Shown: positions 41 to 37,242 of the stretch, piece by piece
Layout of the letters: every line of letters starts with the position of its first letter
Position numbering within the stretch: position 1 is the first letter of the stretch
Assembly: GCF_001194135.2 (NCBI RefSeq)
Contig: NC_068981.1
Location: forward strand, 24,238,352-24,276,141
DNA length: 37,790 nucleotides
Source: Octopus bimaculoides
Taxonomy: Eukaryota
Reading direction: 5' to 3'
Made by a program: the position numbers and the translations under genes
The notes under the pieces: model-generated
The model's database searches: none
What the model was told of the DNA's origin: nothing
What the model saw: the letters and a program-made list of their open reading frames with translations, nothing else

Positions 41-1140
41 TAATATAAGGGAAGGTCAAAGATTATCCTCACTTTGATCGAAACCTTTTTTAGGTTGGCC
101 GCACTGCGTAACAGAGGTTTGACCTTCATTGCTTTAGTTTTCTTTCTTGTGTTACAGAGTAAACATGGCTTCTCCGCTGGCTGTGTGTACCAAGTAGGAG
201 CAGGGATCAGTGATCTGACTTCTCTGGTTTAAAGGTGACAGCGGCTGAAATTCTTCTAAGGCTTTCAATATAATAAGGAGACAGCGTCTCTACCGCATAG
301 AAGTGTGAATAAGTGGATCGAGAAGATTTGAAATGACAAGACAAGGATGAAGCACGAAGAAGGAGTAGCACGCCCATCAACTGCCTTCACTGACGTGAAG
401 ATTCAACAAGCTCGAGAGATGTTTCTGCCAAACTGACCAATGACAACCGATGATGTGCTTTGTTTTCTGCACATTAGTCGTGGTTTTGCATAAGAAATCG
501 TCCACGACAAGCGAGATGGGTTCCAAGAGAACTTAGTGAAACGCATAAGTTTGGGGTTCTATCAAACGCTTACTCGACCGCTACAACGATGAAGGCAAGC
601 GTTTTTGGAGAGAATAGTCACAGGAGATGAGACCTGGTTCCATCATTTTGAGACAGAATCCTAAAGGCAGAGCATGGAGTGGAAAATCCCGAAATCACCA
701 ACGAAACGTAAATTCTCAACCTTCCACAGAAAAAGTGATGCTAACTGTCTTGGAGACGCAAAAGGGTCTCCTACTGAAACATTACCTGCAAAAAAGATCA
801 ACAGTTACCAATATAGGCTACAGTGAAATGCTGGCCAACAAACTGAAATCAGCAATTAGTAGAAAACGTCGAGGCCTATTGTCAAAGCAAGTGTCAATGT
901 TGCACGACAATGCACGCCAACATACAGCCGCCTACACCGTTGAAACTATTAAAAAATTGGACTTCGAGTAGCTGAAACACTATGCATTCAGTTCAGATCT
1001 CATACTTTCCGACTATCACCTCTTTGGACCGCTCAAACATCCTTTACGAGGTTGGAGATTTGCTACGGAAGAAGAAGCAGTGGCTGCATGAACATTCGGA
1101 AACCTTCTTCTCCGAAGGAATAAGCAAGCTTGTGAATAAG
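41..1140 (+). mobile_element. Decayed mariner (DD34D) DNA transposon with transposase pseudogene
   Basis: ATG at 165 begins MASPLAVCTK*EQ. RIVTGDETWFHHFE is at 611-652 and KVMLTV...LLSKQVSMLHDNARQHTAA at about 733-930, followed by FSSDLILSDYHLFGPLK. There are 34 residues between the HDNA Asp and the SDYHLF Asp. Multiple stops and frameshifts are present. The 3' end is replaced by an unrelated repeat at 1145, and the 5' TIR near 41 is only tentative. Confidence 0.93.
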
Positions 1141-2560: not shown

Positions 2561-2714
2561 GTGCTTATTTCTATGTCAGGGTTGTGTTGGACGAATGATA
2601 GAGGAGAGCTCAGTACATGTTTTGAGGATATAGATGTTTTTCTTTTTTGAAATCGCAACTGAATGCTTGTTTCACGACCCGAGTGTCTTTACATACCTTC
2701 ATACATGCATACGC

Positions 2715-2741
2715 ACATACATACATACATACATACATACA

Positions 2742-2775
<34 letters not shown>

Positions 2776-2782
2776 CATACAT
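2715..2782. repeat. (ACAT)n microsatellite, 5' flank of the LINE fragment
   Basis: Read directly from the sequence. Confidence 0.97.
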
Positions 2783-3131
2783 AAACCCAGCGGATGTTAA
2801 CATGAAGCTGAAGATCAGGGAAAAAGAGAAAACCTGTTCTGAACTGTTGAGAAATCTGCAGTTACTTTATCTAGATTACAAGTTCAGGTTTACACCTGTA
2901 TTTATTGGGGCCCTGGGATATGTAACACACTGCCTAAATACCAATCTTGAGAAATTAAGCTTTTCAAAACCAGATTGGAGAAAGCTAATTCGAAGACTAC
3001 AGATCCAATCCATCACTGGAACTGTAAAAATCTGTAAAACTTTCCAGAAGTTTATCATTTAAATATATATGAACATGTCTAGATATGTAACTATATGCAT
3101 GAGAATGCCTACACAAAACATACAAATCTGC
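2783..3131 (+). mobile_element. 5'-truncated R4/Dong-type non-LTR retrotransposon (C-terminus of the restriction-like endonuclease plus short 3' UTR)
   Basis: Open frame PADVNMKLKIREKEKTCSELLRNLQLLY...FTPVFIGALGYV...LEKLSF...LQIQSITGTVKICKTFQKFII*. It fits the R4-clade C-terminal pattern (K..EK..KY..L, P(I/V)xIGALG, LQ...GT..I). The stop is at 3060-3062, and (ACAT)n resumes at 3132. Confidence 0.85.
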
Positions 3132-3513: not shown

Positions 3514-3912
3514 NNNNNNNNNNNNNNNNNNNNNNNNNNNNNNNNNNNNNNNNNNNNNNNNNNNNNNNNNNNNNNNNNNNNNNNNNNNNNNNNNNNNNNN
3601 NNNNNNNNNNNNNNNNNNNNNNNNNNNNNNNNNNNNNNNNNNNNNNNNNNNNNNNNNNNNNNNNNNNNNNNNNNNNNNNNNNNNNNNNNNNNNNNNNNNN
3701 NNNNNNNNNNNNNNNNNNNNNNNNNNNNNNNNNNNNNNNNNNNNNNNNNNNNNNNNNNNNNNNNNNNNNNNNNNNNNNNNNNNNNNNNNNNNNNNNNNNN
3801 NNNNNNNNNNNNNNNNNNNNNNNNNNNNNNNNNNNNNNNNNNNNNNNNNNNNNNNNNNNNNNNNNNNNNNNNNNNNNNNNNNNATATATATATATATATA
3901 TATATGACAGAC

Positions 3913-5020: not shown

Positions 5021-5288
5021 TTAACCAATTAACCACACGCACGATATACGTGTTCTTCACTTCAGCTTTGATATTATTCTTATTTTAGTGTCCTTTGTCT
5101 GAAATCTTTCGTCACACATCCTGTGACCTCTTCAGCGACTCACATCCCACATGGAGACACGTGTGATGGAGATTCGTTGAAGAGGTCACAAGGTGTGTGA
5201 CGAAAGATTTCAGGTACAGGACACTAAAATAAGAATAATAAAGTTGAAGTGATGAACAAGTATACGATGCGTCTGGTTATTTGGTAAA
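5021..5288. repeat. Long imperfect palindrome (about 128-bp arms) of Penelope-like terminal repeat sequence, with hammerhead-like cores
   Basis: 5030-5141 versus the reverse complement of 5171-5279 shows 14 substitutions and a 3-nt indel (about 85%). Each arm reads (C/T)TGAAGA-G-GTCACA-loop-TGTGAC-GAAA-GATTTC. The palindrome is seen directly; the Penelope origin is inferred. Confidence 0.8.
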
Positions 5289-6698: not shown

Positions 6699-8391
6699 GT
6701 AATTGAGAATATCTGAACCGAGCTGCTTGCAAGTCGATCAGCAGTCACGATCGAATGGCGAAATATTCATATGAACACGTAGACAAGTCATAACTTACAA
6801 GTCTAGAGGGATAAATACTCTGAGTGAAAAGCCATTATACACGAAACCTATGATTTTAGTGACTGGAGCTTTGATTCAGAAAATGTGTGTTCTTTGATCA
6901 TGATATCACCTTCGTCCGTGATAAACAACTCAGTTAGTCATCTATATATAGTTCGCTTTTTCGCAAATTCTAAACACACATGCCAAACTGCGTGACGATG
7001 AGATCTTTCAAGTAAGAGAATAATTGCTTTTCATTCTGATAACTCTTTCCCTCATTACATATCCTACGTTATTAACGAAAATAAATGCTAATATTCTTAG
7101 AATGAGATGTTATCGTATGCTAAATTGTTATGCTTAATGGAGGAAATGTTACACCACCACGACTAGCTTCCTCTTCATAATATCTCTCTAGATCCTTGCT
7201 GTGTTTTCATTTTATTATTTCATTCTATTTTTTTAGTTTTTAGTTTTATAATTTCGAAATTGATCATTAGTTCAGTTCGAAGGGGAAATTATTTTCTCCT
7301 TGCTTTATATAACTCTTGCTATTTTCCCACCGGTTTCGGGTGACTCACTTCATATCAAGAGTGATGGTAGTTGAACAGCTTGTACACTTCATGTGTTATC
7401 GATACTTGGTTCAGAAATGGACTTAATGTTTTATTCATATTTTGTTCACCGTCTCACTTGTTTTATTCATTTTTCTTTTCATTACTTCGAAGATTGTTAT
7501 TGATCTACATTCGGAAATAAAAAAAAAACAAGAATAATTAATGCACTAACTTATTTTAGGTTAAACACAAAGGCGTAATAACTTAGAGAGGTGTGACATT
7601 CATGCCTTTCTCGGGAGCATTGACTGTTTCAGTTAACTGAAAAAAAAAAATCAACGCGGAATCGAAACCAAGTCGCAGAATTTGGTTACTGAGGAATTTA
7701 GCAATTAGTGTGCACTATTCGCCACAGTACAATTAAAATATTTGATGCAGAAACAAAAACAAAGGAATGTGTTTACTTATTCTTCATCAAGAGAAAGTGA
7801 TATTAATGTCTCTGTTATTACGAAATTCGTTTGAAAATGTGCTGTTTATGTGTAAATGAAGATTGCTGTTTGTGGCATTCGTTAAACGTATCATTTTCTC
7901 TTCCTCTAATTAAATAGTATATAATGTCACAGCTATACTCCAAAATAGCCTCATTTCTGCCAAATTCTGTCATAAAAGAACAACTATAAATGGAACTCTT
8001 TCAGGCAGATATTTAAACTTTCAAACACATAGTTAAGCTGAGCAAATAATGAGGGTATATATAGTAGATAAAACAGACAGCGATTCACATCATACTTTTA
8101 TACAATTGCAACACATTTAGCGAGGCCAATCATTTTTTTTTTTTTCTATACACAAATATTGATTTCTTACACTGACAGAAGGCGACACAGTTACAAAACA
8201 CTTTTATACGATCAAACCACTCTCCAGTATATTGCTGGTATATTTGTCATTGCTGCTGGTGGCATGAAAATCAAAATATATTACTGCATATCTTAACTTG
8301 AAACGTACATTTTCACTGTACTTTACTGATTGTGAAATTGACAGCCCCTTTCAAAACGGACCTCAGTATGCTAATGGTAGGTGTTGGACCC

Positions 8392-8513
8392 GGTGACCGG
8401 TAAATTCTACCGTGGTAAATTCCACCACGGAAAATTCCACCAGGTAAATTTCACCATAGGTAAATTCCACCACGGTATATTCCACCAAGGTAAATTTCAC
8501 CATAGGTGAAATT
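8392..8513 (+). repeat. Left TIR, array of about 15-bp units (consensus GGTAAATTCCACCAC)
   Basis: Units start at 8399, 8414, 8429, 8443, 8459, 8474 and 8489. Confidence 0.93.
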
Positions 8514-8548
8514 ATTATTGCTGTTATTATTATTTTTGTTATTATTAA

Positions 8549-8581
<33 letters not shown>

Positions 8582-8601
8582 CATTATTATTATTATTATT
8601 A

Positions 8602-8660
<59 letters not shown>
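8511..8660. repeat. (ATT)n trinucleotide microsatellite
   Basis: Read directly. It explains the poly-Leu and poly-Ile ORFs. Confidence 0.98.
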
Positions 8661-8662
<2 letters not shown>

Positions 8663-9790
8663 ATGGGCTACGATATTATGGAAATAAATAGAAGAATGTA
8701 TAAAAAAATAATATCAATAATGTCCATGAATACAAAAAATACGAGGGGAAAAAAATAATTAAGGAACAGCCAGACAAAGAAATACCAGGTGAATACTTTA
8801 AACACCTGAATGAGGAAGGGGTAACAAAAAGATACTCATTGAAATTTATAAAACAAAGCAAATACTCAATGAGAGATAAAAATATTATACAATATTTACA
8901 AGAGAGAAACGACTGTTATGGAAGAAAAAAAGACATGCAGATATTGCAAAAAAACAAAACAAAAAAGAAAAACAAAGGAAATATCGAACACAAGGCAATA
9001 CAATGTGGAAAAATAGCAGAGACGAAAAGTAAAGAGAGACACGATGAGATAGCCATGACAATCTTTGCAAACTTACTGCAGCAATAGTGGAGGTGCAATG
9101 GCCCAGTGGCCCAGTGGTTAGGGCAGCGGACTCGCAGTCATAGGTTCGCGGTTTCGATTCCCAGACCAGGCGTTGTGAGTGTTTATTGAGCGAAAACACC
9201 TAAAGCTCCACGAGGCTCTGGCAGGGGATGGNNNNNNNNNNCACAACTTTCTCTCACTCTTACTTCCTCTTTCTGTTGTGCCTGTAATTCGAAGGGTCAG
9301 CCTTGTCACACTGTGTCACGCTGAATCTCCCCGAGAACTACGTCAAGGGTACACGTGTCTGTGGAGTGCTCAGCCACTTGCACATTAATTTCACGAGCAA
9401 GCTGTTCCGTTGATCGGATCAACTGGAACCCTCGACGTCGTAAGCGACGGAGTGCCAACAACTGCAGCAATGTAACATATCAAAAAAAAAAAAAAAAAGC
9501 AGAAAATCAGAAACGTGCAAATAGAAAAGGTAACAACTGAAAAGGTTAAGATTTTAGTAAATAGCCCAGTAATGACACCAAACCATATAGAATTCAATAA
9601 ACCCAATATTACAATATTTGACCACGAACGAAAAGAAACAATAATAATCGAAATTGAAATAACATCGACAAAAAACTGAACGAAGTGGAAATGACAAAAA
9701 TACAAAAGTGTAATAGACTTGCTAAAGAAATTAAACAGATGAATGGATATAAGGTTAAAATAATACCATTTATAACGGAATGGTTTGAGA
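8661..9790 (+). mobile_element. R4/Dong-type non-LTR retrotransposon fragment (CCHC zinc knuckle plus restriction-like endonuclease), split by a SINE
   Basis: Across frameshifts it reads YLQERNDCYGRK-TCRYC...NIEHKAIQC...KERHDEIAMTIFANLLQQ [SINE] ...KIRNVQIEKVTTEKVKILVNSPVMTPNHIEFNKPNITIFDHERKETIIIEIEITS..LNEVEMTKIQKCNRLAKEIKQMNGYKVKIIPF. This gives the C-x2-C/H/C knuckle, RH(D/N) motif and a decayed PD-(D/E)xK nuclease. The C-terminus and 3' UTR are missing. Confidence 0.85.
9086..9460 (+). mobile_element. SINE family 3 (tRNA-derived), full length with 11-bp TSD
   Basis: A box TGGCCCAGTGG (partly duplicated), B box GTTTCGATTCC and a tail ending ...ggagtgccaaca. TSD ACTGCAGCAAT at 9075-9085 and 9461-9471. 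There is a 10-N gap at 9232-9241. Confidence 0.93.
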
Positions 9791-9819
9791 CGGAATGGTT
9801 TCAAAGAGGGGAAAAAAAA

Positions 9820-10215
9820 GACGAAATGTACATTTGGTGCAGTGTAGTCAACAGGGACAGTGCCTAAGATGGGAGGAATATATGGTCAATCGCAAAATCA
9901 CATGGAAAGAACTTTGGGCTTGGGAACAAGCAAGAACATCCTTCCTGATCAAGTCCATCTTCGACGTTTTGCCGTCACCGGTCAATTTAGTCCGGCTGAT
10001 GAATGTAAATGCAGAGAGAAAGCGACAATGAGACATGTTCTGTAAAAACTGCTGGCTGGCACTGGACAGATATACATGGCGTCACAACCAAGTCCTCGGT
10101 GTTATAAGCACAGCACTCAAGGAGAAAATCGAGGAGTACAGTAGGGGGGAGTACTCGAAAGTGGAAAAGCGCGGAAGGATATACCTCTAGAAGGAAGGAA
10201 AAGGACATAAGACCA
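9820..10215 (+). mobile_element. HERO-type non-LTR retrotransposon fragment (pre-knuckle region plus CCHC knuckle)
   Basis: VQCSQQGQCLRWEEYMVNRKITWKELWAWEQARTSFLIKSIFDVLPSPVNLVR...DECKCREKATMRHVL..CWLALDRYTWRHNQVLGVISTALKEKIEE, read across frameshifts. The DVLPSPxNL and RYTWRHNQVL motifs are typical of HERO. There is no RT and no endonuclease. Confidence 0.85.
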
Positions 10216-10294
10216 GGTATTGACCCACGGTCCAGAGAAACTGACCACGGTGATTATTAGCGGGAGCAGCTTATATTGGAAGTCTGTCCATAGC

Positions 10295-10399
10295 TGGAAT
10301 TTACTATGGTGGAATATACCGTGGAATTTACCTATGGTGAAATTTACCTGGTGGAATTTTCCGTGGTGAAATTTTCCGTGGTGGAATTTACCTAGAACC
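10295..10399 (-). repeat. Right TIR, inverted array of about 15-bp units
   Basis: The reverse complement reproduces the left arm, including the variant units ggaaaattccacca, ggtaaatttcaccata and ggtatattccacca in the same order. Confidence 0.93.
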
Positions 10400-10519
10400 G
10401 TTGGACCCCTTTGGGAGTAAACACAAACCCGGATGAGAAAAATACGCCTCAAGTGTTACTTTCCGATTATAATTCCATTCACATCTAGGAGGCGAATATT
10501 GTAGGAATATTAAATCAAA

Positions 10520-11944: not shown

Positions 11945-12375
11945 TGATTTCAAATTTTAGCACAAGGCCAGCAATTTTGGAGTAGGGGGTTAAGTCGATT
12001 ACATCAGCCCAAGTTTCCAACTGGTACTTATTTTATCAGCCCCGAAAGGATTAAAGGCAAAGTCGACCTCGACGAAATTTGAACTAAAAAACGTAAAGAC
12101 AGACGAAATGCTGCTCAGCATGTTGCCCGGCGGTGTTAACGATTCTTATTTCTTTACTGCCCACAAGGGGTTACACACAGAAGGGACAGACAAGGACAGA
12201 CAAAGGAATTAAGTCGATTACATCGACCCCAGTGCGTAACTGGTACTTAATTTATCGACCCCGAAAGGATGAAAGGCAAAGTCGACCCCGGCGAAATTTG
12301 AACTCAGAACGTAAAGACAGACGAAATACCGCTCAGCATTTCGCCCAGCGTGCTAACGATTCTGCCAGCTCGCAG
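11945..12375 (-). mobile_element. SINE family 2 dimer
   Basis: Minus strand reads gcgagctggcagaatcgttagc (A box), ttctgagttcaaatt (B box) and gtcgactttgcctttcatcctttcggggtcgataaattaagtaccag (conserved core). The second unit starts after the A box. Confidence 0.93.
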
Positions 12376-12696
12376 TCTTTGTCATCAAAAATAGTAGCTG
12401 TGGAAGTTACAATACAGACCGCGCCATTAGATAGCATGTAATAAGATTGATGAAAATGACAGTGTATTAATTATTGGCATAGCAATAACAACTGATTATA
12501 ACGCTCTACAGAAATGAACTGTTGAACTGAAAACATGGCAAGTTAAGGAACGTGTCTATCATTCCTTAACAACCAGAATGATATACAGCCATAGAGTAAG
12601 GACATAGATAATTTTTCTTACAAGGCTAGACATTGGTGCGTACCAGAAAATAGCTATATTAGAATCTATAATCATTTTTCAGTCATTCTTACACAG

Positions 12697-13529: not shown

Positions 13530-14135
13530 ATTATTTCCTACTCTAGGCACAAGGTCTGAAATTTTTAGGGAAGATTACCAGTCGATTAATTATCGACCCA
13601 AAAGGATGAAAGGCAAAGTCGACTTCGGCAGAATTTGAACTCAGAACGTAAAAACAGACGAAATACCGCTAAGCATTTTGACCGGCGTGCTAATGTTTCT
13701 CATTTATTTACTGCCCACAAGGGGCTAAACATAGAGGGGACAAACGAAGACAGACAAAGGGATTAAGTCGATTAGATCGACCACACTGCGTAACTGGTAC
13801 TTAATTTATCGACCCTGAAAGGATGAAAGGCAAAGTCAACCTTGGCGGAATTTGAACTCAGAACGTAAAGACAGACAAAATACCGCTAAGCATTTCGCCC
13901 GGCATGCTAACGTTTCTTATTTCTGTATTGCCCACAAGGGGCTAAACATAGAGGGGACAAACAAAGGGATTAAGTCGATTAGATCGACCCAACTGCATAA
14001 CTGGTACATCAATCCCGAAAAGATGAAAGAGCAAAGTCGACCTCGGTGGAATTTGAACTCAGAACGCAACGGCAGACGAAATGCCGCTAAGCATTTCGTC
14101 CAGCGTGCTAACGTTTCTGCCAGCTCGCAGCCTTC
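13530..14135 (-). mobile_element. SINE family 2 trimer
   Basis: Units at about 14135-13914, 13913-13697 and 13696-13530. Only the first has a complete head. Confidence 0.93.
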
Positions 14136-15918: not shown

Positions 15919-16577
15919 NNNNNNNNNNNNNNNNNNNNNNNNNNNNNNNNNNNNNNNNNNNNNNNNNNNNNNNNNNNNNNNNNNNNNNNNNNNNNNNNNN
16001 NNNNNNNNNNNNNNNNNNNNNNNNNNNNNNNNNNNNNNNNNNNNNNNNNNNNNNNNNNNNNNNNNNNNNNNNNNNNNNNNNNNNNNNNNNNNNNNNNNNN
16101 NNNNNNNNNNNNNNNNNNNNNNNNNNNNNNNNNNNNNNNNNNNNNNNNNNNNNNNNNNNNNNNNNNNNNNNNNNNNNNNNNNNNNNNNNNNNNNNNNNNN
16201 NNNNNNNNNNNNNNNNNNNNNNNNNNNNNNNNNNNNNNNNNNNNNNNNNNNNNNNNNNNNNNNNNNNNNNNNNNNNNNNNNNNNNNNNNNNNNNNNNNNN
16301 NNNNNNNNNNNNNNNNNNNNNNNNNNNNNNNNNNNNNNNNNNNNNNNNNNNNNNNNNNNNNNNNNNNNNNNNNNNNNNNNNNNNNNNNNNNNNNNNNNNN
16401 NNNNNNNNNNNNNNNNNNNNNNNNNNNNNNNNNNNNNNNNNNNNNNNNNNNNNNNNNNNNNNNNNNNNNNNNNNNNNNNNNNNNNNNNNNNNNNNNNNNN
16501 NNNNNNNNNNNNNNNNNNNNNNNNNNNNNNNNNNNNNNNNNNNNNNNNNNNNNNNNNNNNNNNNNNNNNNNNNNNNN
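15841..16577. repeat. (TA)/(TACA)/(CA)n microsatellite followed by a gap (N 15919-16577)
   Basis: Read directly from the sequence. Confidence 0.97.
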
Positions 16578-16859: not shown

Positions 16860-17620
16860 AGACGAAGAACTCCCATCCGACAAGTGTTTCGTTCCTTATA
16901 CCTGACACTCTACGGGAACCAGGCCCACCTAGGTCATGTCTACTATGTGCCCTTCTGCTGCTTTCCAAAATATTGTCTCTAGCGAGATTTGAACCTGGGT
17001 CGTTCTTTTTGTGAACTTGTGTCCTCGGGTCTGTGTTTCGGCCCACTAGGTCACTCTGCCCGACGAAGGAACCAGTTCTCTTATTCCTTCTACTCCTGTA
17101 AATAGCCAATGGAATCCATAACTAGGTCCATTGGTCGTTGTTCTTCTCCGATATCCACATTGACCTCTATCCAGCAATATCAGACAAGCGTTTGATTGTA
17201 GCAGTTTTTTCTGTGATCTTTGATACCCAACTGCCCGACAGCCAGTAGGTTAATGCAACCACAAATCTTCACGATCCAACTTCAACTATTTTCACAGTAG
17301 AGTGGTAACACTCACTCCTTAGCTGCTTTGCCAGCTCACCATATTTGCTCATCTTAAAAACGTTCCACTCTTCTATGTGGCTCTCGTATGATACTGACAA
17401 TTCAATGAGAATCACTTTGGCAACCTGTTCAGACCATTACAGGAGATCTTGGTCGTGAGCCATTCTTGGTGATAAACTCTGGGTAGTTCTTGTGTTTCTC
17501 ACTGATGCCTGCAGCTAATTCCCAGGAATCCTCGCGTCCATGTAGGTTTCCTCCTGCCACAAATTCATATCCAGTTATCTTCTTCGCTCCAGCCCACTGC
17601 AGAACAATGTCTTCAGGAAA
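16860..17620 (-). mobile_element. HERO-type non-LTR retrotransposon 3' end (restriction-like endonuclease plus 3' UTR)
   Basis: EFVAGGNLHGREDSWELAAGI...YPEFITKNGSRP[+1]DLL*WSEQVAKVILIELSVSYESHIEEWNVFKMSKYGELAKQLRSECY...IVEVGS*RFV...IKRLSDIAG*RSMWI. This matches the HERO pattern RPD/IELxVxxE/KxxKY/VEVGxRGF. The 3' UTR has two cgaaacac motifs. Confidence 0.88.
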
Positions 17621-18325: not shown

Positions 18326-19133
18326 AACATTTGTAGATTTTAGTTTTATTCCGTTTCATGTAGAAATGTCATGTCTTGGTAATGACTTCTGATAGTTTTG
18401 CCAAGGTTGGCGCCATCTTTATATTTCTTTAATGTTCTTTGTGAATTACAGCATTAGAGATTACAGCTGTTTTTATTGTTTGTATGGCGGGTTTCTCAAA
18501 TTAGATTAATTAGCACATATCTTGATCAATATCTGTTTTAATGAGCCACAAACCTCATTCTAGAAGTGTCATTGAAAGTATCCATCCAGCAGCCTACCGT
18601 ACACGCACAAGCACGCACACACAAACACCCACACAGACAGACACACGCGCGAGCATACACACAAACAGACAATCCAACCAATGAGGGGAGCTGATATCTG
18701 GTCGCTCGTTTTGCCATAAATAGGAGCCAAATCTTTCTCTAGCGTCTTCAAAAGAAAGCATGTTGGATAATAAATTTTTCGATAAAATGTATCCAGGAAA
18801 GATATGATAGTATTGACTGGAATGCGTTTGGTTATACGCTTTCTGGAAGGGAATGACATAAAGTTAAACAAAAGCAGCAACAACGACAACAACATCAACA
18901 AATGATTACGTGCAGATATTATTATCAAGTTTGCTGAATTCCTAAATTGTCTGAACGTCTATTCTGTTTTGTTCTCTCTCTAAAAATATCACATGTTTAG
19001 CAAGATACCCAGATATTGTGTATGTAGATCAGTTGTATTGAATAAATTCTAAATAAGGTGAACTACATCTCACACGAGAAACGAAATCACACATTCACGC
19101 ACATAAAGATAAATATCAAGTTAATTCAAGATA

Positions 19134-19360
19134 TTCTTGTCTACTCTAGGCCCATGGCCCGAAATTTTTTTTTTTGTGGGGGGGGGGGGTCAATCGAATA
19201 GATCAACTCCAGTACGCAACTGGTACTCAATTTATCGACCCCGAAAGGATGAAAGGCAAAGTCGACCTCGGCGGAATTTGAACTCAGAACATCACGGCAG
19301 ACGAAATACCGCTAAGCATTTCGCCCGGCGTGCTAACGTTTGTGCCAGCTCACCGCCTTA
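19134..19360 (-). mobile_element. SINE family 2 monomer
   Basis: Complete head (aaggcggtgagctggcacaaacgttagc), core and tail. Confidence 0.93.
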
Positions 19361-19741: not shown

Positions 19742-20078
19742 TATGAATTGTAAAAATATTAAACGTAGTGGATAAACTTACAGAGCTATATACTTCTAAA
19801 ATAGCAGTTGAGTAGATTCTACATAGATAATTAATTGAGATCTCCTTGACAAAAAGCCAGAAAACCCCAGTTGCAGTTTGAGATGCGAGAAAACTTCCAG
19901 CCGAGTTATGCAGGGAGGCAACCATTACGTTCTCTATGGGCGTATGCAGGCGTATTGGGGATGAAATGATACTTCCCAGATCTTGTTATTCAAACCCATT
20001 TCAGCCCTTATTGAGCCAGACCTATTGTCAAAGAGCTTTATCCAAGCCGTGATCATTCAATTTTTTTTTTCTTTATAT

Positions 20079-20293
20079 AAGGCACCGAGCTGCAGAAACG
20101 TTAGCATGCCAGGCGAAATGCTTTGCGGTTTTTTGTCTGTCTTTACGTTCTGAGTCCAAATTCCACCGAGGTCGACTTTGCCTTTCATCCTTTCGGGGTT
20201 GATAAGTTAAGTACCAGTTGCGTACTGGGGTCGATCTAATCGACTGGACCTTCCACAAAAATTTCGGGCCTTGTGCCTAAAGAAGAAAAGAAT
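20079..20293 (+). mobile_element. SINE family 2 monomer (the only plus-strand copy)
   Basis: aaggcaccgagctgcagaaacgttagc...gtcgactttgcctttcatcctttcgggg...aaatttcgggccttgtgccta. Confidence 0.93.
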
Positions 20294-34402: not shown

Positions 34403-35249
34403 NNNNNNNNNNNNNNNNNNNNNNNNNNNNNNNNNNNNNNNNNNNNNNNNNNNNNNNNNNNNNNNNNNNNNNNNNNNNNNNNNNNNNNNNNNNNNNNNNN
34501 NNNNNNNNNNNNNNNNNNNNNNNNNNNNNNNNNNNNNNNNNNNNNNNNNNNNNNNNNNNNNNNNNNNNNNNNNNNNNNNNNNNNNNNNNNNNNNNNNNNN
34601 NNNNNNNNNNNNNNNNNNNNNNNNNNNNNNNNNNNNNNNNNNNNNNNNNNNNNNNNNNNNNNNNNNNNNNNNNNNNNNNNNNNNNNNNNNNNNNNNNNNN
34701 NNNNNNNNNNNNNNNNNNNNNNNNNNNNNNNNNNNNNNNNNNNNNNNNNNNNNNNNNNNNNNNNNNNNNNNNNNNNNNNNNNNNNNNNNNNNNNNNNNNN
34801 NNNNNNNNNNNNNNNNNNNNNNNNNNNNNNNNNNNNNNNNNNNNNNNNNNNNNNNNNNNNNNNNNNNNNNNNNNNNNNNNNNNNNNNNNNNNNNNNNNNN
34901 NNNNNNNNNNNNNNNNNNNNNNNNNNNNNNNNNNNNNNNNNNNNNNNNNNNNNNNNNNNNNNNNNNNNNNNNNNNNNNNNNNNNNNNNNNNNNNNNNNNN
35001 NNNNNNNNNNNNNNNNNNNNNNNNNNNNNNNNNNNNNNNNNNNNNNNNNNNNNNNNNNNNNNNNNNNNNNNNNNNNNNNNNNNNNNNNNNNNNNNNNNNN
35101 NNNNNNNNNNNNNNNNNNNNNNNNNNNNNNNNNNNNNNNNNNNNNNNNNNNNNNNNNNNNNNNNNNNNNNNNNNNNNNNNNNNNNNNNNNNNNNNNNNNN
35201 NNNNNNNNNNNNNNNNNNNNNNNNNNNNNNNNNNNNNNNNNNNNNNNNN
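34403..35249. other. Largest assembly gap (847 N)
   Basis: Run of N. Confidence 0.99.
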
Positions 35250-36232: not shown

Positions 36233-37242
36233 TACGAGGAGATAACCAAAGGTAACCGGAAAAAATCTCTGTGGGACAAACCAGTTGTAGTTCAGGCTTC
36301 CACCTCTAAGAAGCCATNNNNNNNNNNNNNNNNNNNNNNNNNNNNNNNNNNNNNNNNNNNNNNNNNNNNNNNNNNNNNNNNNNNNNNNNNNNNNNNNNNN
36401 NNNNNNNNNNNNNNNNNNNNNNNNNNNNNNNNNNNNNNNNNNNNNNNNNNNNNNNNNNNNNNNNNNNNNNNNNNNNNNNNNNNNNNNNNNNNNNNNNNNN
36501 NNNNNNNNNTGGCAGTGCTTTTCTCCTATTCGTCGATTTTTGCGGTCACTGAAACGAAAGAACAGCATGCTTCCGTGAAATTATGTTTTCTACTAGGGAA
36601 AAGGGCGGACGAAACCATTACCATACTTCAAGCAGCTTACAAGAACGCTGCCATGAGCAAAACAAAAGCATACGAGTTTTCTTCAGGCATTAGAAATGGT
36701 CACTTGTCGGTTGAATACCAACCTCGTTCAGGACGACCGTCGAGCTCCAGAACGAATGAAAACATCACGAAAATTCATGAACTGATCATGGAGGACTGTC
36801 ACCGAACAATTGACGAACTTGTTGATATGACTGGTGTGTTCTGGAGCTGTTGCAAACGAATTTTGAGCGAGGAATTGAGAATGAAGAGCTGCAGCAAAAT
36901 TTGTGCCTAGCTTGCTCATAGAAGATCAAAAGTAGTCGGGACTGAACGCATGTCGTGAACTGAGAGAACAGCTGGAAGTCGATCTGGACCGTTTTTCGAA
37001 AGTTATTACTGGTGACTAAAGTTGGTGCTACGGAATTTGTAGATGTGAAAGAGGTGAAGAAGAAGACATCACTTCGCAGAAGTTCCAGTACTGCTTTGAA
37101 CAGTGGAAAACGCGTCTGGGCCGATGGCATTGGCTCAAATGGAGAATACTTTGATGGCGATAAAATTGTAAACATAAAATTGTAAACAATTGAATAAATA
37201 ATATCGCAAAATTCCGGTTTCTTTTGAGGAAAATCCTTGTTA
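36233..37242 (+). mobile_element. Internally deleted mariner transposon
   Basis: TIRs TA-cgaggagataaccaaaggtaaccggaa and (reverse complement) TA-acaaggattttcctcaaaagaaaccggaa. Reads TKEQHASVKLCFLLGK...PRSGRPSSSRTNENI...RILSEELRMK...KVITGD*SWCYG, fused at about 37035 to FVDVKEVKKKT..FQYCFEQWKTRL..GSNGEYFDGDK. Gap N 36318-36509. Confidence 0.92.

What the first reader, a model, noticed from the sequence alone, without database searches (positions are those of the whole stretch)
8383..10408. Pack-MULE-like element: 9-bp TSD and tandem-array TIRs enclosing fragments of two unrelated retrotransposons
Seen in the sequence: a perfect 9-bp direct repeat GTTGGACCC (8383-8391 and 10400-10408) flanks about 105-120-bp inverted arms built from ~15-bp units, and the variant units are collinear between arms. 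Inside are (ATT)n, an R4/Dong-type knuckle plus endonuclease fragment (with a nested SINE) and a HERO-type knuckle fragment, but no transposase. Established knowledge: 9-bp TSDs and TIRs with internal tandem arrays typify Mutator/Foldback (Rehavkus/Muta1-like) elements, Pack-MULEs capture genomic fragments in plants, and target-primed LINE insertions normally keep their 3' ends. Inference: both LINE pieces lack both their 5' and 3' ends and are fused at about 9775-9800, which carries a short duplication acggaatggttt. That fits capture of genomic DNA by the DNA transposon better than two independent insertions. If so, this is an animal Pack-MULE-like system shuffling retroelement domains.
Basis: partly seen in the sequence, partly recalled or inferred. 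Interest (0 to 1): 0.82.

Follow-up and report, generated by a model that had tools for sequence, protein, structure and literature searches.

The report
Non-autonomous Mutator transposon carrying LINE debris
This is a real, transposase-less Mutator-family DNA transposon (Muta1-like, 9-bp target duplication, tandem-repeat ends) whose own interior has been wholly replaced by dead LINE and SINE fragments; it is a good example of a known kind, and a working "animal Pack-MULE system" is not shown.

Summary
The structure is real. An exact 9-bp duplication (GTTGGACCC) flanks two inverted arms. Each arm has a 7-bp terminal motif (GGTGACC / TAGAACC) and 6-7 tandem ~15-bp units.

I found the same termini and units in public contigs from another, probably different, marine animal. 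There they bound copies with 8-9-bp target duplications. These include a 2.2-kb copy encoding a FLYWCH zinc finger plus a MULE transposase domain, and internal-deletion derivatives of it. The family is therefore a Muta1-like Mutator element.

The window copy keeps only the two ends. None of the family's backbone or transposase remains. Its interior is (ATT)50, a decayed C-terminal piece of one restriction-like-endonuclease (RLE) LINE with a SINE nested in it, and a knuckle piece of a second RLE LINE.

The 15-bp duplication lies inside the first LINE, not at the fusion. The real junction (~9813-9830) looks like an ordinary LINE-into-LINE insertion.

Replacement of the interior by repair-type capture is slightly favoured (~0.5). 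One relative carries 357 bp of foreign filler, which supports this. Nested insertion plus deletion (~0.4) is not excluded. No second copy of the chimera was found. The assembly gap lies inside the SINE and affects nothing.

The parts
8383..8391 (.). left copy of the 9-bp target-site duplication GTTGGACCC
   Evidence: Exact and not extendable. It abuts the family terminus.
8392..8398 (+). left terminal motif GGTGACC (a GGTNACC palindrome)
   Evidence: The same motif ends the copies in L011, L012, L014 and L015.
8399..8510 (+). left arm: 7 tandem ~15-bp units (GGTAAATTCCACCA plus a 0-2 nt linker) and a partial eighth
   Evidence: It is 91% identical to the left arm of L012, terminus included.
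8511..8661 (.). (ATT)50 microsatellite that starts where the family's subterminal backbone should continue
   Evidence: the family has GGGGAATATTGGAATATCACC... at this point.
8662..8730 (+). A-rich stretch, unassigned; possibly the decayed 5' continuation of LINE piece 1
   Evidence: The profile of the relatives aligns weakly from about 8692.
8731..9085 (+). LINE piece 1, part a: region before and including the CCHC knuckle and RH(D/N) motif of an RLE-type (R2/R4/Dong-like) LINE. Frameshifted.
   Evidence: (P0077 residues 856-963 of 1174).
9086..9460 (+). nested tRNA-type SINE (A box TGGCCCAGTGG, B-box-like GGTTTCGATTCC). It is flanked by the exact 11-bp TSD ACTGCAGCAAT (9075-9085 and 9461-9471) and contains the assembly gap 9232-9241.
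   Evidence: No tRNA or Rfam call.
9472..9827 (+). LINE piece 1, part b: PD..D/ExK endonuclease core up to the family-invariant WDG motif and 11 codons beyond. It contains a 15-bp tandem duplication at 9774-9803.
   Evidence: adding DGMVSKRGKKRRN raises the profile score from 30.6 to 52.6 bits.
9813..9830 (+). junction between LINE piece 1 (3'-truncated, about 95 codons plus UTR missing) and LINE piece 2 (5'-truncated)
   Evidence: Both profiles claim KKRRN.
9828..10202 (+). LINE piece 2: pre-knuckle region, CCHC knuckle and RYTWRHNQVL of a second RLE-type LINE. It stops before the PD..ExK core and has 2 frameshifts and 2 stops.
   Evidence: 160.6 bits.
10203..10294 (.). unassigned 92 bp between LINE piece 2 and the right arm; not the family's 3' subterminal sequence
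10295..10392 (-). right arm: 6-7 tandem units. The outer units are of the family's right-arm type. The inner block is nearly identical to the window's own left arm.
10393..10399 (-). right terminal motif ...TAGAACC (GGTTCTA on the other strand)
   Evidence: Identical in L007, L010 and L012, with one substitution in L011. The paralogous empty site in L009 places the boundary right after it.
10400..10408 (.). right copy of the 9-bp target-site duplication GTTGGACCC

Best explanation
Shown: the 2,008-bp insert (8392-10399) is a non-autonomous member of a Muta1-like family of the Mutator superfamily. It entered this site by cut-and-paste integration, which made the 9-bp duplication GTTGGACCC. Each end is a short terminal motif followed by an array of ~15-bp units.

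By analogy with Muta1, these units are the binding sites of a FLYWCH-MULE transposase supplied in trans by an autonomous copy. That step is inferred from literature on Muta1.

Inferred, and committed to at about 0.5: the element's native interior (5' region, transposase gene, 3' region) was lost and replaced in one DNA-repair event. This would be abortive gap repair after excision, or break repair with template switching inside the repeat arrays. The repair copied one contiguous stretch of ordinary repeat-rich genomic DNA. That stretch was an old RLE-type LINE into which a second, 5'-truncated RLE-type LINE had already inserted. The SINE jumped into the first LINE piece at some later or earlier time.

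The result is a Mu-like 'same ends, foreign middle' element, which is Pack-type in structure. Its cargo is dead transposon debris with no coding potential.
For: Identity as a MULE:
- Exact 9-bp TSD and arms.
- The same termini and units bound L012 (1,284 bp, TSD GCAAAACCT 9/9), L011/L014 (TSD ATTCCAAT(G), 8-9 bp) and L015 (2,197 bp, direct repeat GTGGAAAC, 8 exact or 9 with 1 mismatch).
- L015 and L013 encode FLYWCH (39.1 and 36.4 bits, cut-off 23.6) plus the MULE domain PF10551 (42.6 and 32.2 bits, cut-off 27.6).
- L007, L010 and L011 are plain internal-deletion derivatives of that copy.
- A paralogous empty site in L009 fixes the right boundary.
- Muta1 has the same plan: 8/9-bp TSD, a 10-bp palindromic terminal motif, 9 copies of a 12-bp repeat with 3-4-bp linkers, a FLYWCH transposase, and repeats needed for binding, cleavage and excision (PMC5499845, PMC5225508).

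Replacement of the interior:
- The window copy shares only the arms with the family. There is no backbone and no transposase.
- Homology to the backbone stops about 10 bp inside the left array.
- L012 shows the same process in milder form. In it, 357 bp of foreign DNA replace positions 321-1768 of L015, with an intact 9/9 TSD.
- The window's two arms share an inner block that in the relatives is specific to the left arm. This is what template switching between the inverted arrays would give.
- The LINE pieces carry at least 8 frameshifts and at least 4 stops in about 1.1 kb, while the shared arm block is 93% identical and the TSD is intact. This is weak evidence that the cargo is older than the element.
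Against: - Only one copy of this chimera is known. No parental locus, no second copy with another TSD and no empty site could be looked for, because the source genome is not in any searchable collection.
- The relatives come from other samples and share no other repeat with the window in 74 kb. They are probably another species, and the window species' own backbone might differ.
- A short, MITE-like relative exists (L008). Such an element plus nested LINE insertions needs only one later deletion.
- A SINE did insert here by retroposition, so nested insertion happens at this locus.
- The age argument is crude. Some frameshifts in A-runs may be assembly errors in a draft with 12 gaps.
Confidence: 0.5

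Rival explanations
1. Nested insertion followed by deletion, all at this locus. A short (MITE-like) or ordinary non-autonomous family member inserted at GTTGGACCC. A 5'-truncated RLE LINE then inserted into its interior by target-primed reverse transcription, and a second 5'-truncated RLE LINE inserted into the first. One or two deletions removed the 3' parts of both LINEs and whatever remained of the element's own interior. The SINE came in independently.
For: - The piece 1/piece 2 junction is a normal LINE-in-LINE 5' junction, and both pieces have the same orientation.
- The SINE with its own 11-bp TSD proves retroposition into this element.
- The window is packed with TE debris.
- Short arms-plus-loop relatives exist (L008).
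- The other TIR-bounded copies share a constant interior and this chimera is so far unique.
- Dong-type LINEs are reported to target (TAA)n repeats in insects, molluscs and cnidarians (PMC7998251), and a 150-bp (ATT)n abuts piece 1.
Against: - Starting from a typical member, both the backbone of at least 150 bp on the left and the backbone of about 250 bp on the right must be erased exactly up to the arrays, while both arrays stay intact. That takes at least two well-placed deletions.
- The microsatellite is in the wrong orientation for the canonical Dong target. The sense-strand upstream flank of Bombyx Dong is (TAA)7 (primer in PMC3774820), whereas here it is (ATT)n.
- The LINE pieces look at least as decayed as the element's arms.
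Confidence: 0.4
2. Composite (macro)transposition. The left end of one family member and the right end of a neighbouring one moved together and carried the genomic DNA lying between them.
For: The two ends have different terminal motifs and outer units. Foldback and Ac/Ds elements are known (from general knowledge) to mobilise intervening DNA in this way.
Against: The different termini are a normal family feature of single elements (L012, L015). A composite should retain the subterminal backbone next to each arm, and none is present.
Confidence: 0.05
3. Not a transposon: a chance palindrome, or a scaffolding artefact joining two loci at the gap 9232-9241.
For: The draft has 12 gaps, and one lies inside the element.
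Against: - The 9-bp TSD, the 11-bp SINE TSD and the collinear LINE frame all span the gap.
- The termini match independent family copies to the base.
- The unit count is 13 against 0.28 expected.
Confidence: 0.02

Closest known systems
Muta1 (Aedes aegypti), an active FLYWCH-MULE and 'type 2 foldback' element (Liu and Wessler 2017; PMC5225508, PMC5499845)
   Same: - 8/9-bp TSD.
- TIRs of about 100-150 bp, built from a short palindromic terminal motif plus about 9 tandem 12-bp repeats with 3-4-bp linkers (period 15-16).
- Transposase of about 450-500 aa with an N-terminal FLYWCH finger and a MULE DDE domain.
- Natural non-autonomous derivatives with unequal repeat numbers at the two ends.
- The terminal motifs even look alike: GGGTCTACCC against GGTGACC / GGTTCTA.
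   Different: - Different host: a marine animal, not a mosquito.
- Different repeat-unit sequence.
- The two termini of this family differ from each other.
- No activity data exist for this family.
- The window copy has no native interior at all.
Pack-MULEs of plants, and the Mu1-Mu8 classes of maize (same TIRs, unrelated captured interiors)
   Same: MULE ends and a 9-bp TSD enclose DNA that is unrelated to the autonomous element. A sister copy (L012) carries foreign filler.
   Different: - The cargo is LINE/SINE/microsatellite debris, not host gene fragments.
- No parental locus is known.
- Copy number is unknown (one copy seen).
- No transcript or ORF.
- Animal host.
Animal Pack-TIRs and Ssk-FB4 (Tan et al. 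2021, PMC8277862)
   Same: - TIR-bounded element with a foreign interior in an animal.
- Most animal cases are single-copy and are explained by repair-type gap filling, the mechanism favoured here.
- FB4 is a foldback/MULE-related element.
   Different: - That survey found no Pack-MULE in 100 reference genomes.
- It required a non-TE insert with a unique parental copy, a criterion this element cannot meet.
Rehavkus (Repbase; Tribolium and other arthropods, annelids)
   Same: 9-bp TSD. [quoted passage not shown]
   Different: The Rehavkus transposase has a PHD finger. The relatives here have FLYWCH, and Pfam reports no PHD.
Ds, dSpm, P and Mu internal-deletion derivatives with filler DNA (abortive gap repair; from general knowledge)
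   Same: The series L015 to L011/L010/L007 (simple deletions), then L012 (deletion plus 357-bp filler), then the window copy (everything replaced) is the classic spectrum.
   Different: Here the replacement is total and the filler is about 1.8 kb.

Membership tests
Mutator superfamily (MULE) | target-site duplication of 8-11 bp, typically 9 | tested here: met
   Window 9/9. L012 9/9. L011/L014 8-9. L015 8 exact, or 9 with 1 mismatch.
Mutator superfamily (MULE) | long terminal inverted repeats | tested here: met
   Arms of about 105-119 bp, 86-93% identical.
Mutator superfamily (MULE) | autonomous copies with the same ends encode a MULE-type DDE transposase (Pfam PF10551) | tested here: met
   L015 (same termini and units) scores 42.6 bits and L013 scores 32.2 bits, against a cut-off of 27.6. 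These are in other samples. The window itself has no transposase, and the source genome could not be searched.
Muta1-like / FLYWCH-MULE (type 2 foldback) | N-terminal FLYWCH (WRKY-GCM1 type) zinc finger in the transposase | tested here: met
   PF04500 scores 36-39 bits, against a cut-off of 23.6, in L011, L013 and L015.
Muta1-like / FLYWCH-MULE (type 2 foldback) | TIR made of a short terminal motif plus tandem subterminal repeats with short linkers | tested here: met
   7-bp motif plus 6-7 units, period 15. The relatives have 5-13 units. Compared with PMC5499845.
Muta1-like / FLYWCH-MULE (type 2 foldback) | phylogenetic placement of the transposase with Muta/Phantom clades | not tested
Rehavkus | PHD finger in the transposase | tested here: not met
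   Pfam finds FLYWCH and MULE only.
Pack-MULE / Pack-TIR | interior unrelated to the autonomous element, between intact TIRs with a TSD | tested here: met
   Only the arms match the family.
Pack-MULE / Pack-TIR | interior derived from host (non-TE) gene sequence | tested here: not met
   The interior is a microsatellite, two LINE fragments and a SINE.
Pack-MULE / Pack-TIR | identifiable parental locus elsewhere in the genome, and/or further copies with different TSDs | not testable with these tools
   The source genome is absent from all collections. There is no other copy in the window.
RLE-type LINE (R2/R4/Dong/HERO group), piece 1 | CCHC knuckle plus PD..(D/E)xK endonuclease downstream of the RT, and no N-terminal APE | tested here: met
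   Piece 1 aligns to residues 856-1078 of 1100-1300-aa proteins that have a central RVT_1 and no Exo_endo_phos domain. The RT of P0077 is closest to R2 structures.
R4/Dong clade specifically, piece 1 | RT phylogeny within R4/Dong; insertion in (TAA)n or rDNA | tested here: inconclusive
   No RT is present in the piece and there were no reference sequences. The adjacent microsatellite is (ATT)n on the sense strand, opposite to the Bombyx Dong flank.
HERO clade specifically, piece 2 | RT phylogeny within HERO | not testable with these tools
   Only the knuckle region is present. The relatives have an RT upstream and an RLE downstream, but no named HERO reference was available.
tRNA-derived SINE | internal pol III A and B boxes, retroposition TSD | tested here: met
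   A box TGGCCCAGTGG at 9099, B-box-like GGTTTCGATTCC at 9150, and an 11-bp TSD. ARAGORN and Rfam give no tRNA call, and no second copy was found.

The most novel reading that the evidence does not exclude
This Muta1-like family is, or recently was, an active animal MULE that repeatedly swaps its interior for foreign DNA. The evidence would be the window copy (LINE domains), L012 (357-bp filler) and possibly L007 (an intact TAF5-like exon about 740 bp inside a right end). That would make it a true Pack-MULE system in a marine invertebrate, a case the 100-genome survey of Tan et al. did not find.
Probability: 0.25. Interest if true: 0.6.

Novelty: new member of a known kind. Interest (0 to 1): 0.38.

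Why it matters
MULEs are rare and little studied in animals. The one large survey found no animal Pack-MULE. A Muta1-like family with clear ends, 8-9-bp TSDs and a recoverable FLYWCH-MULE transposase, plus a graded series of deletion, filler and fully replaced derivatives, would be a useful natural data set. It bears on how foldback-type ends promote template switching and cargo capture.

For genome annotation, the practical point is that these about 110-bp repeat arrays mark transposon ends, and that the LINE fragments between them are cargo or debris rather than independent insertions. As it stands, the window copy itself is an inert, decayed element.

Tried and rejected
1. Other copies in the window. 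None of the TIR units, interior, SINE or flanks recur. The third GTTGGACCC at 25596 (-) has unrelated flanks and is a chance match.

2. DNA pattern scans for two adjacent TIR units. Metagenome contigs gave 0. Viral contigs gave 0. Bacterial/archaeal genomes gave 2 single chance hits (L001, L002).

3. SINE patterns in viral and metagenome contigs, to read through the gap: 0 hits.

4. Pfam and PDB searches with the two LINE pieces: nothing. Rfam and ARAGORN on the element: nothing.

5. First protein search with three reading frames of the arrays. The only hit was borderline (P0001, E=5.6). It turned out to be real. A second search with the other frames then found the family. Five 'GGIFRGG' hits (P0243, P0245-P0247, P0251) are unrelated repeat proteins and were discarded.

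6. Flanks of piece-1 relatives (L003-L005), checked for (TAA)n targets: uninformative.

7. The idea that (ATT)n marks a Dong target site: rejected as support because the orientation is opposite.

8. The idea that ACGGAATGGTTT x2 marks the fusion or a TSD: rejected.

9. Clean TSDs for L010 and L008. L010 has lost its left terminus, and L008 is too diverged.


Full report
**1. The observation**

The region was read directly.
- GTTGGACCC occurs at 8383-8391 and 10400-10408. The repeat is exact and cannot be extended by a base on either side.
- A third occurrence at 25596 (-) has unrelated flanks. One extra hit of a 9-mer in 75 kb of two strands is expected about 0.3 times.
- Just inside the two copies lie inverted arms. 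The left arm is GGTGACC followed by seven ~15-bp units (8399-8510). The right arm is six to seven units followed by TAGAACC (10295-10399).
- The unit GGTAAATTCCACCA (up to 2 mismatches) occurs 13 times in the 37.8-kb window. All 13 are in these arms, 7 on one strand and 6 on the other. Shuffles give 0.28.
- TRF reports period 15 with 7.5 and 6.7 copies.
- The arms are collinear, variant units included: 93% over 72 nt, 86% overall, with one 3-bp indel.

**2. The gap**

The ten N at 9232-9241 lie inside a nested SINE (9086-9460).
- I could not find another copy of this SINE in the window or in the viral or metagenome collections. Continuity of the SINE itself across the gap is therefore unproven, and the true gap length is unknown.
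- Three independent features that straddle the gap show that both sides belong to one locus:
  - the SINE's own exact 11-bp TSD, ACTGCAGCAAT, at 9075-9085 and 9461-9471;
  - the host LINE reading frame, which resumes collinearly after the SINE, with 19 codons here against 17 in relative P0078 between the flanking aligned blocks;
  - the TIR/TSD pair itself.
- No coding frame relevant to the finding runs through the gap.

**3. The interior**

*LINE piece 1*
- After (ATT)50 (8511-8661) comes a decayed piece of a LINE on the + strand.
- An exhaustive HMMER search with its conceptual translation found 213 relatives (best E=9e-27). It aligns to residues about 856-1066 of proteins of 1100-1300 aa.
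- Those proteins have a central RVT_1 domain and no apurinic-type endonuclease. One is named an R2-type element by its source. The RT of the best hit is closest to solved R2 proteins.
- Piece 1 is therefore the CCHC knuckle plus the restriction-like endonuclease (RLE) region of an R2/R4/Dong-group LINE.
- It has at least 6 frameshifts and 2 stops.

*LINE piece 2*
- Piece 2 (about 9828-10202, + strand) matches the pre-knuckle and knuckle region (..DVLPSPVNLVR..CKC..H..C..RYTWRHNQVL) of a different RLE LINE family. There were 75 hits, best E=5e-39, at 45-61% identity.
- A relative's contig shows the RT upstream and the PD..ExK part downstream.
- Piece 2 ends before the catalytic core and has 2 frameshifts and 2 stops.
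- Both pieces contain a knuckle, so they cannot be two halves of one element.
- The clade names R4/Dong and HERO could not be tested, for want of reference sequences.

**4. The junction**

- The duplication is real: a 15-bp tandem, AACGGAATGGTTTGA / GACGGAATGGTTTCA, at 9774-9803.
- It sits on the family-invariant motif (S/T)WDG of piece-1 relatives.
- Behind the duplication, in the shifted frame, the sequence reads DGMVSKRGKKRRN. The relatives have WDGIISKRNKQHRS and WDGAVSKMNVKHRQ.
- Adding this stretch raises the score against a profile of the relatives from 30.6 to 52.6 bits.
- Piece 1 therefore continues to about 9827. The duplication is a slippage event inside it, and the real junction is at about 9813-9830 (KKRRN|VHLVQC).
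- A 3'-interrupted older LINE joined to a 5'-truncated younger LINE of the same orientation is the ordinary left half of a LINE-into-LINE insertion.
- 'Both pieces lack both ends' therefore needs only one further breakpoint on the right. It is not evidence for two captures.

**5. Finding the family**

No DNA collection held the arms. Because the unit is 15 bp, each frame of an array translates into a 5-residue periodic peptide, so I searched the protein collection with these peptides.
- The first search gave one borderline hit (P0001). A tblastn against the window showed it to be real.
- A second search with the other frames gave P0244, P0248, P0249, P0250 and P0252.
- Their contigs are L007-L012. 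Cluster mates of a FLYWCH ORF added L013-L015.
- Most contigs come from one ENA sample (ERZ25072293). One is from ERZ17083489 and one from a Tara Oceans marine metagenome.

What they show:
- **L012** has a complete 1,284-bp copy: GGTGACC plus 8 units, then 13 units plus TAGAACC, flanked by GCAAAACCT on both sides (9/9).
- **L011** (the same locus as L014) has a 1,254-bp copy flanked by ATTCCAAT(G), 8-9 bp.
- **L015** has a 2,197-bp copy flanked by GTGGAAAC, 8 exact or 9 with one mismatch.
- **L009** holds a paralogous empty site for the L010 copy. It places the right boundary immediately after ...CCTAGAACC.
- The unequal termini (GGTGACC at one end, GGTTCTA at the other) are a family feature. 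They coincide to the base with the boundaries that the window's TSD implies.
- L015 encodes a FLYWCH finger (39.1 bits) and a MULE transposase domain (42.6 bits, cut-off 27.6). L013 gives the same ORF between the same subterminal sequences.
- Neither ORF is intact.
- L007, L010 and L011 are simple internal deletions of this structure. L012 has positions 321-1768 replaced by 357 bp of unrelated DNA.

**6. What the window copy is**

- Its left arm, terminus included, is 91% identical to that of L012. Its right arm is 88% identical to those of L010/L009.
- Nothing else matches. There is none of the 5' backbone (GGGGAATATTGGAATATCACCGTGACTTAG...), no transposase, and none of the 3' backbone (...TTCTTACATCTGTGA).
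- Homology to the backbone stops about 10 bp past the last left unit, where (ATT)n begins.
- In the relatives the two arms are distinguishable. The left arm is built of GGTAAATT units with one GGTATATT unit near the inner end. The right arm is mostly GGAAAATT units.
- In the window both arms share one inner block that contains the left-type GGTATATT unit. The arms have therefore exchanged sequence.
- The window shares no other repeat with 74 kb of the ENA loci. The relatives are probably from another species.

**7. Mechanism**

*Shown.* The element is a Mutator-superfamily, foldback-type non-autonomous element inserted with a 9-bp TSD.

*By analogy.* Muta1 of Aedes has an 8/9-bp TSD, a 10-bp palindromic terminal motif, nine 12-bp repeats with 3-4-bp linkers and a FLYWCH transposase. 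Its repeats are required for transposase binding and cleavage and raise excision frequency (PMC5499845, PMC5225508). The 15-bp units here are therefore most likely transposase binding sites, and the copy could only move with transposase supplied in trans.

*How the interior came to be LINE debris is inferred.* I favour replacement in one repair event, at about 0.5. This would be abortive gap repair or break repair with template switching in the arrays, copying one stretch of LINE-in-LINE DNA. My reasons:
- both backbones are erased exactly up to arrays that are themselves intact;
- the arms show signs of template exchange;
- L012 documents filler acquisition in the family;
- the cargo looks at least as old as the arms.

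The rival, at about 0.4, is nested insertion into a short MITE-like member (such members exist: L008) followed by one deletion. Supporting points:
- SINE retroposition into this very element is documented;
- the chimera is so far unique, while other copies share a constant interior;
- Dong-type LINEs are known to target (TAA)n (PMC7998251). However, the microsatellite here is in the opposite orientation to the Bombyx Dong flank (PMC3774820), so this last point does not help the rival.

**8. Comparison and novelty**

- Closest known is Muta1, and more generally the animal FLYWCH-MULEs (Phantom-type; table in PMC6446971).
- It is not Rehavkus proper, because the transposase has FLYWCH and not PHD.
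- Structurally the window copy resembles Mu classes and Pack-MULEs: same ends, foreign middle. It fails the usual Pack criteria of a host-gene insert and an identifiable parent.
- Animal Pack-TIRs are already described: 370 in 100 genomes, none of them MULE, plus Ssk-FB4 in flies (PMC8277862).
- The finding is a new member of a known kind. 'A system shuffling retroelement domains' is not supported, since both pieces are dead fragments with no joint ORF.

**9. Verdict**

- Interest is moderate to low for the window copy itself, and somewhat higher for the family.

Noticed in passing
window 17134-17511 (-): A second fragment of the piece-2-type RLE LINE. This one carries the PD..ExK part (DLL.WSEQ...ELSVSYE...KY), so the family is present elsewhere in this genome.
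   Followed up: partly
window 2634-3062 (+): ORF ending in an RLE-LINE C-terminal motif (..KFRFTPVFIGALGYV..), fused to a TATC/CATA microsatellite translation. It is another LINE remnant.
   Followed up: partly
window 627-971 (+) and 36515-36910 (+): Mariner remnants: the DDE part (Pfam Transposase_1, 37 bits) and a weak Mos1-type HTH.
   Followed up: partly
window 5021-5288: 268-bp hairpin-like palindrome (arms 5072-5141 and 5171-5240, 90% complementary, 29-nt loop). It looks like a MITE or foldback and is unrelated to the 15-bp-unit family.
   Followed up: partly
window 11986-12379, 13586-14134, 19128-19360, 20078-20299: A repeat of about 160-330 bp in at least five copies (75-91% identical), partly tandem. 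It is probably a SINE family, and differs from the SINE nested in the element.
   Followed up: no
window 31627-32596 (-): Reverse-transcriptase-like ORFs (..YLDDCFILW..) interrupted by an assembly gap. This is another retroelement remnant.
   Followed up: no
L007 about 190-275 (-): An intact-looking TAF5-like WD40 exon (LTGHSGPVYATSFNPDNTYLISGSEDGT) with acceptor and donor sites. It lies about 740 bp inside the right end of a family copy whose left end is off the contig. It is either a host exon next to a truncated element or captured gene DNA.
   Followed up: partly
L012 7333-7689: 357 bp of foreign, non-coding filler replace the central 1.45 kb of the element, in a copy with a perfect 9-bp TSD. 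No source for the filler was found in the loci at hand.
   Followed up: yes
L008 750-1035 (Tara Oceans contig): A diverged MITE-like relative of about 290 bp: three units, a spacer of about 150 bp, three inverted units, and GGTTCTAGG-type termini at both ends. No recognisable TSD.
   Followed up: partly
L015 4001-5316; L013 215-1592: The FLYWCH-MULE ORF is broken in both copies. L015 has a deletion of about 100 bp and a frameshift, and L013 has stops. No intact autonomous copy was seen.
   Followed up: partly
window, 12 gaps (e.g. 3514-3883, 15919-16577, 34403-35249): Nearly all assembly gaps abut microsatellites. This is a draft short-read style assembly, so single-base indels in A-runs of the LINE pieces may be errors.
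   Followed up: no
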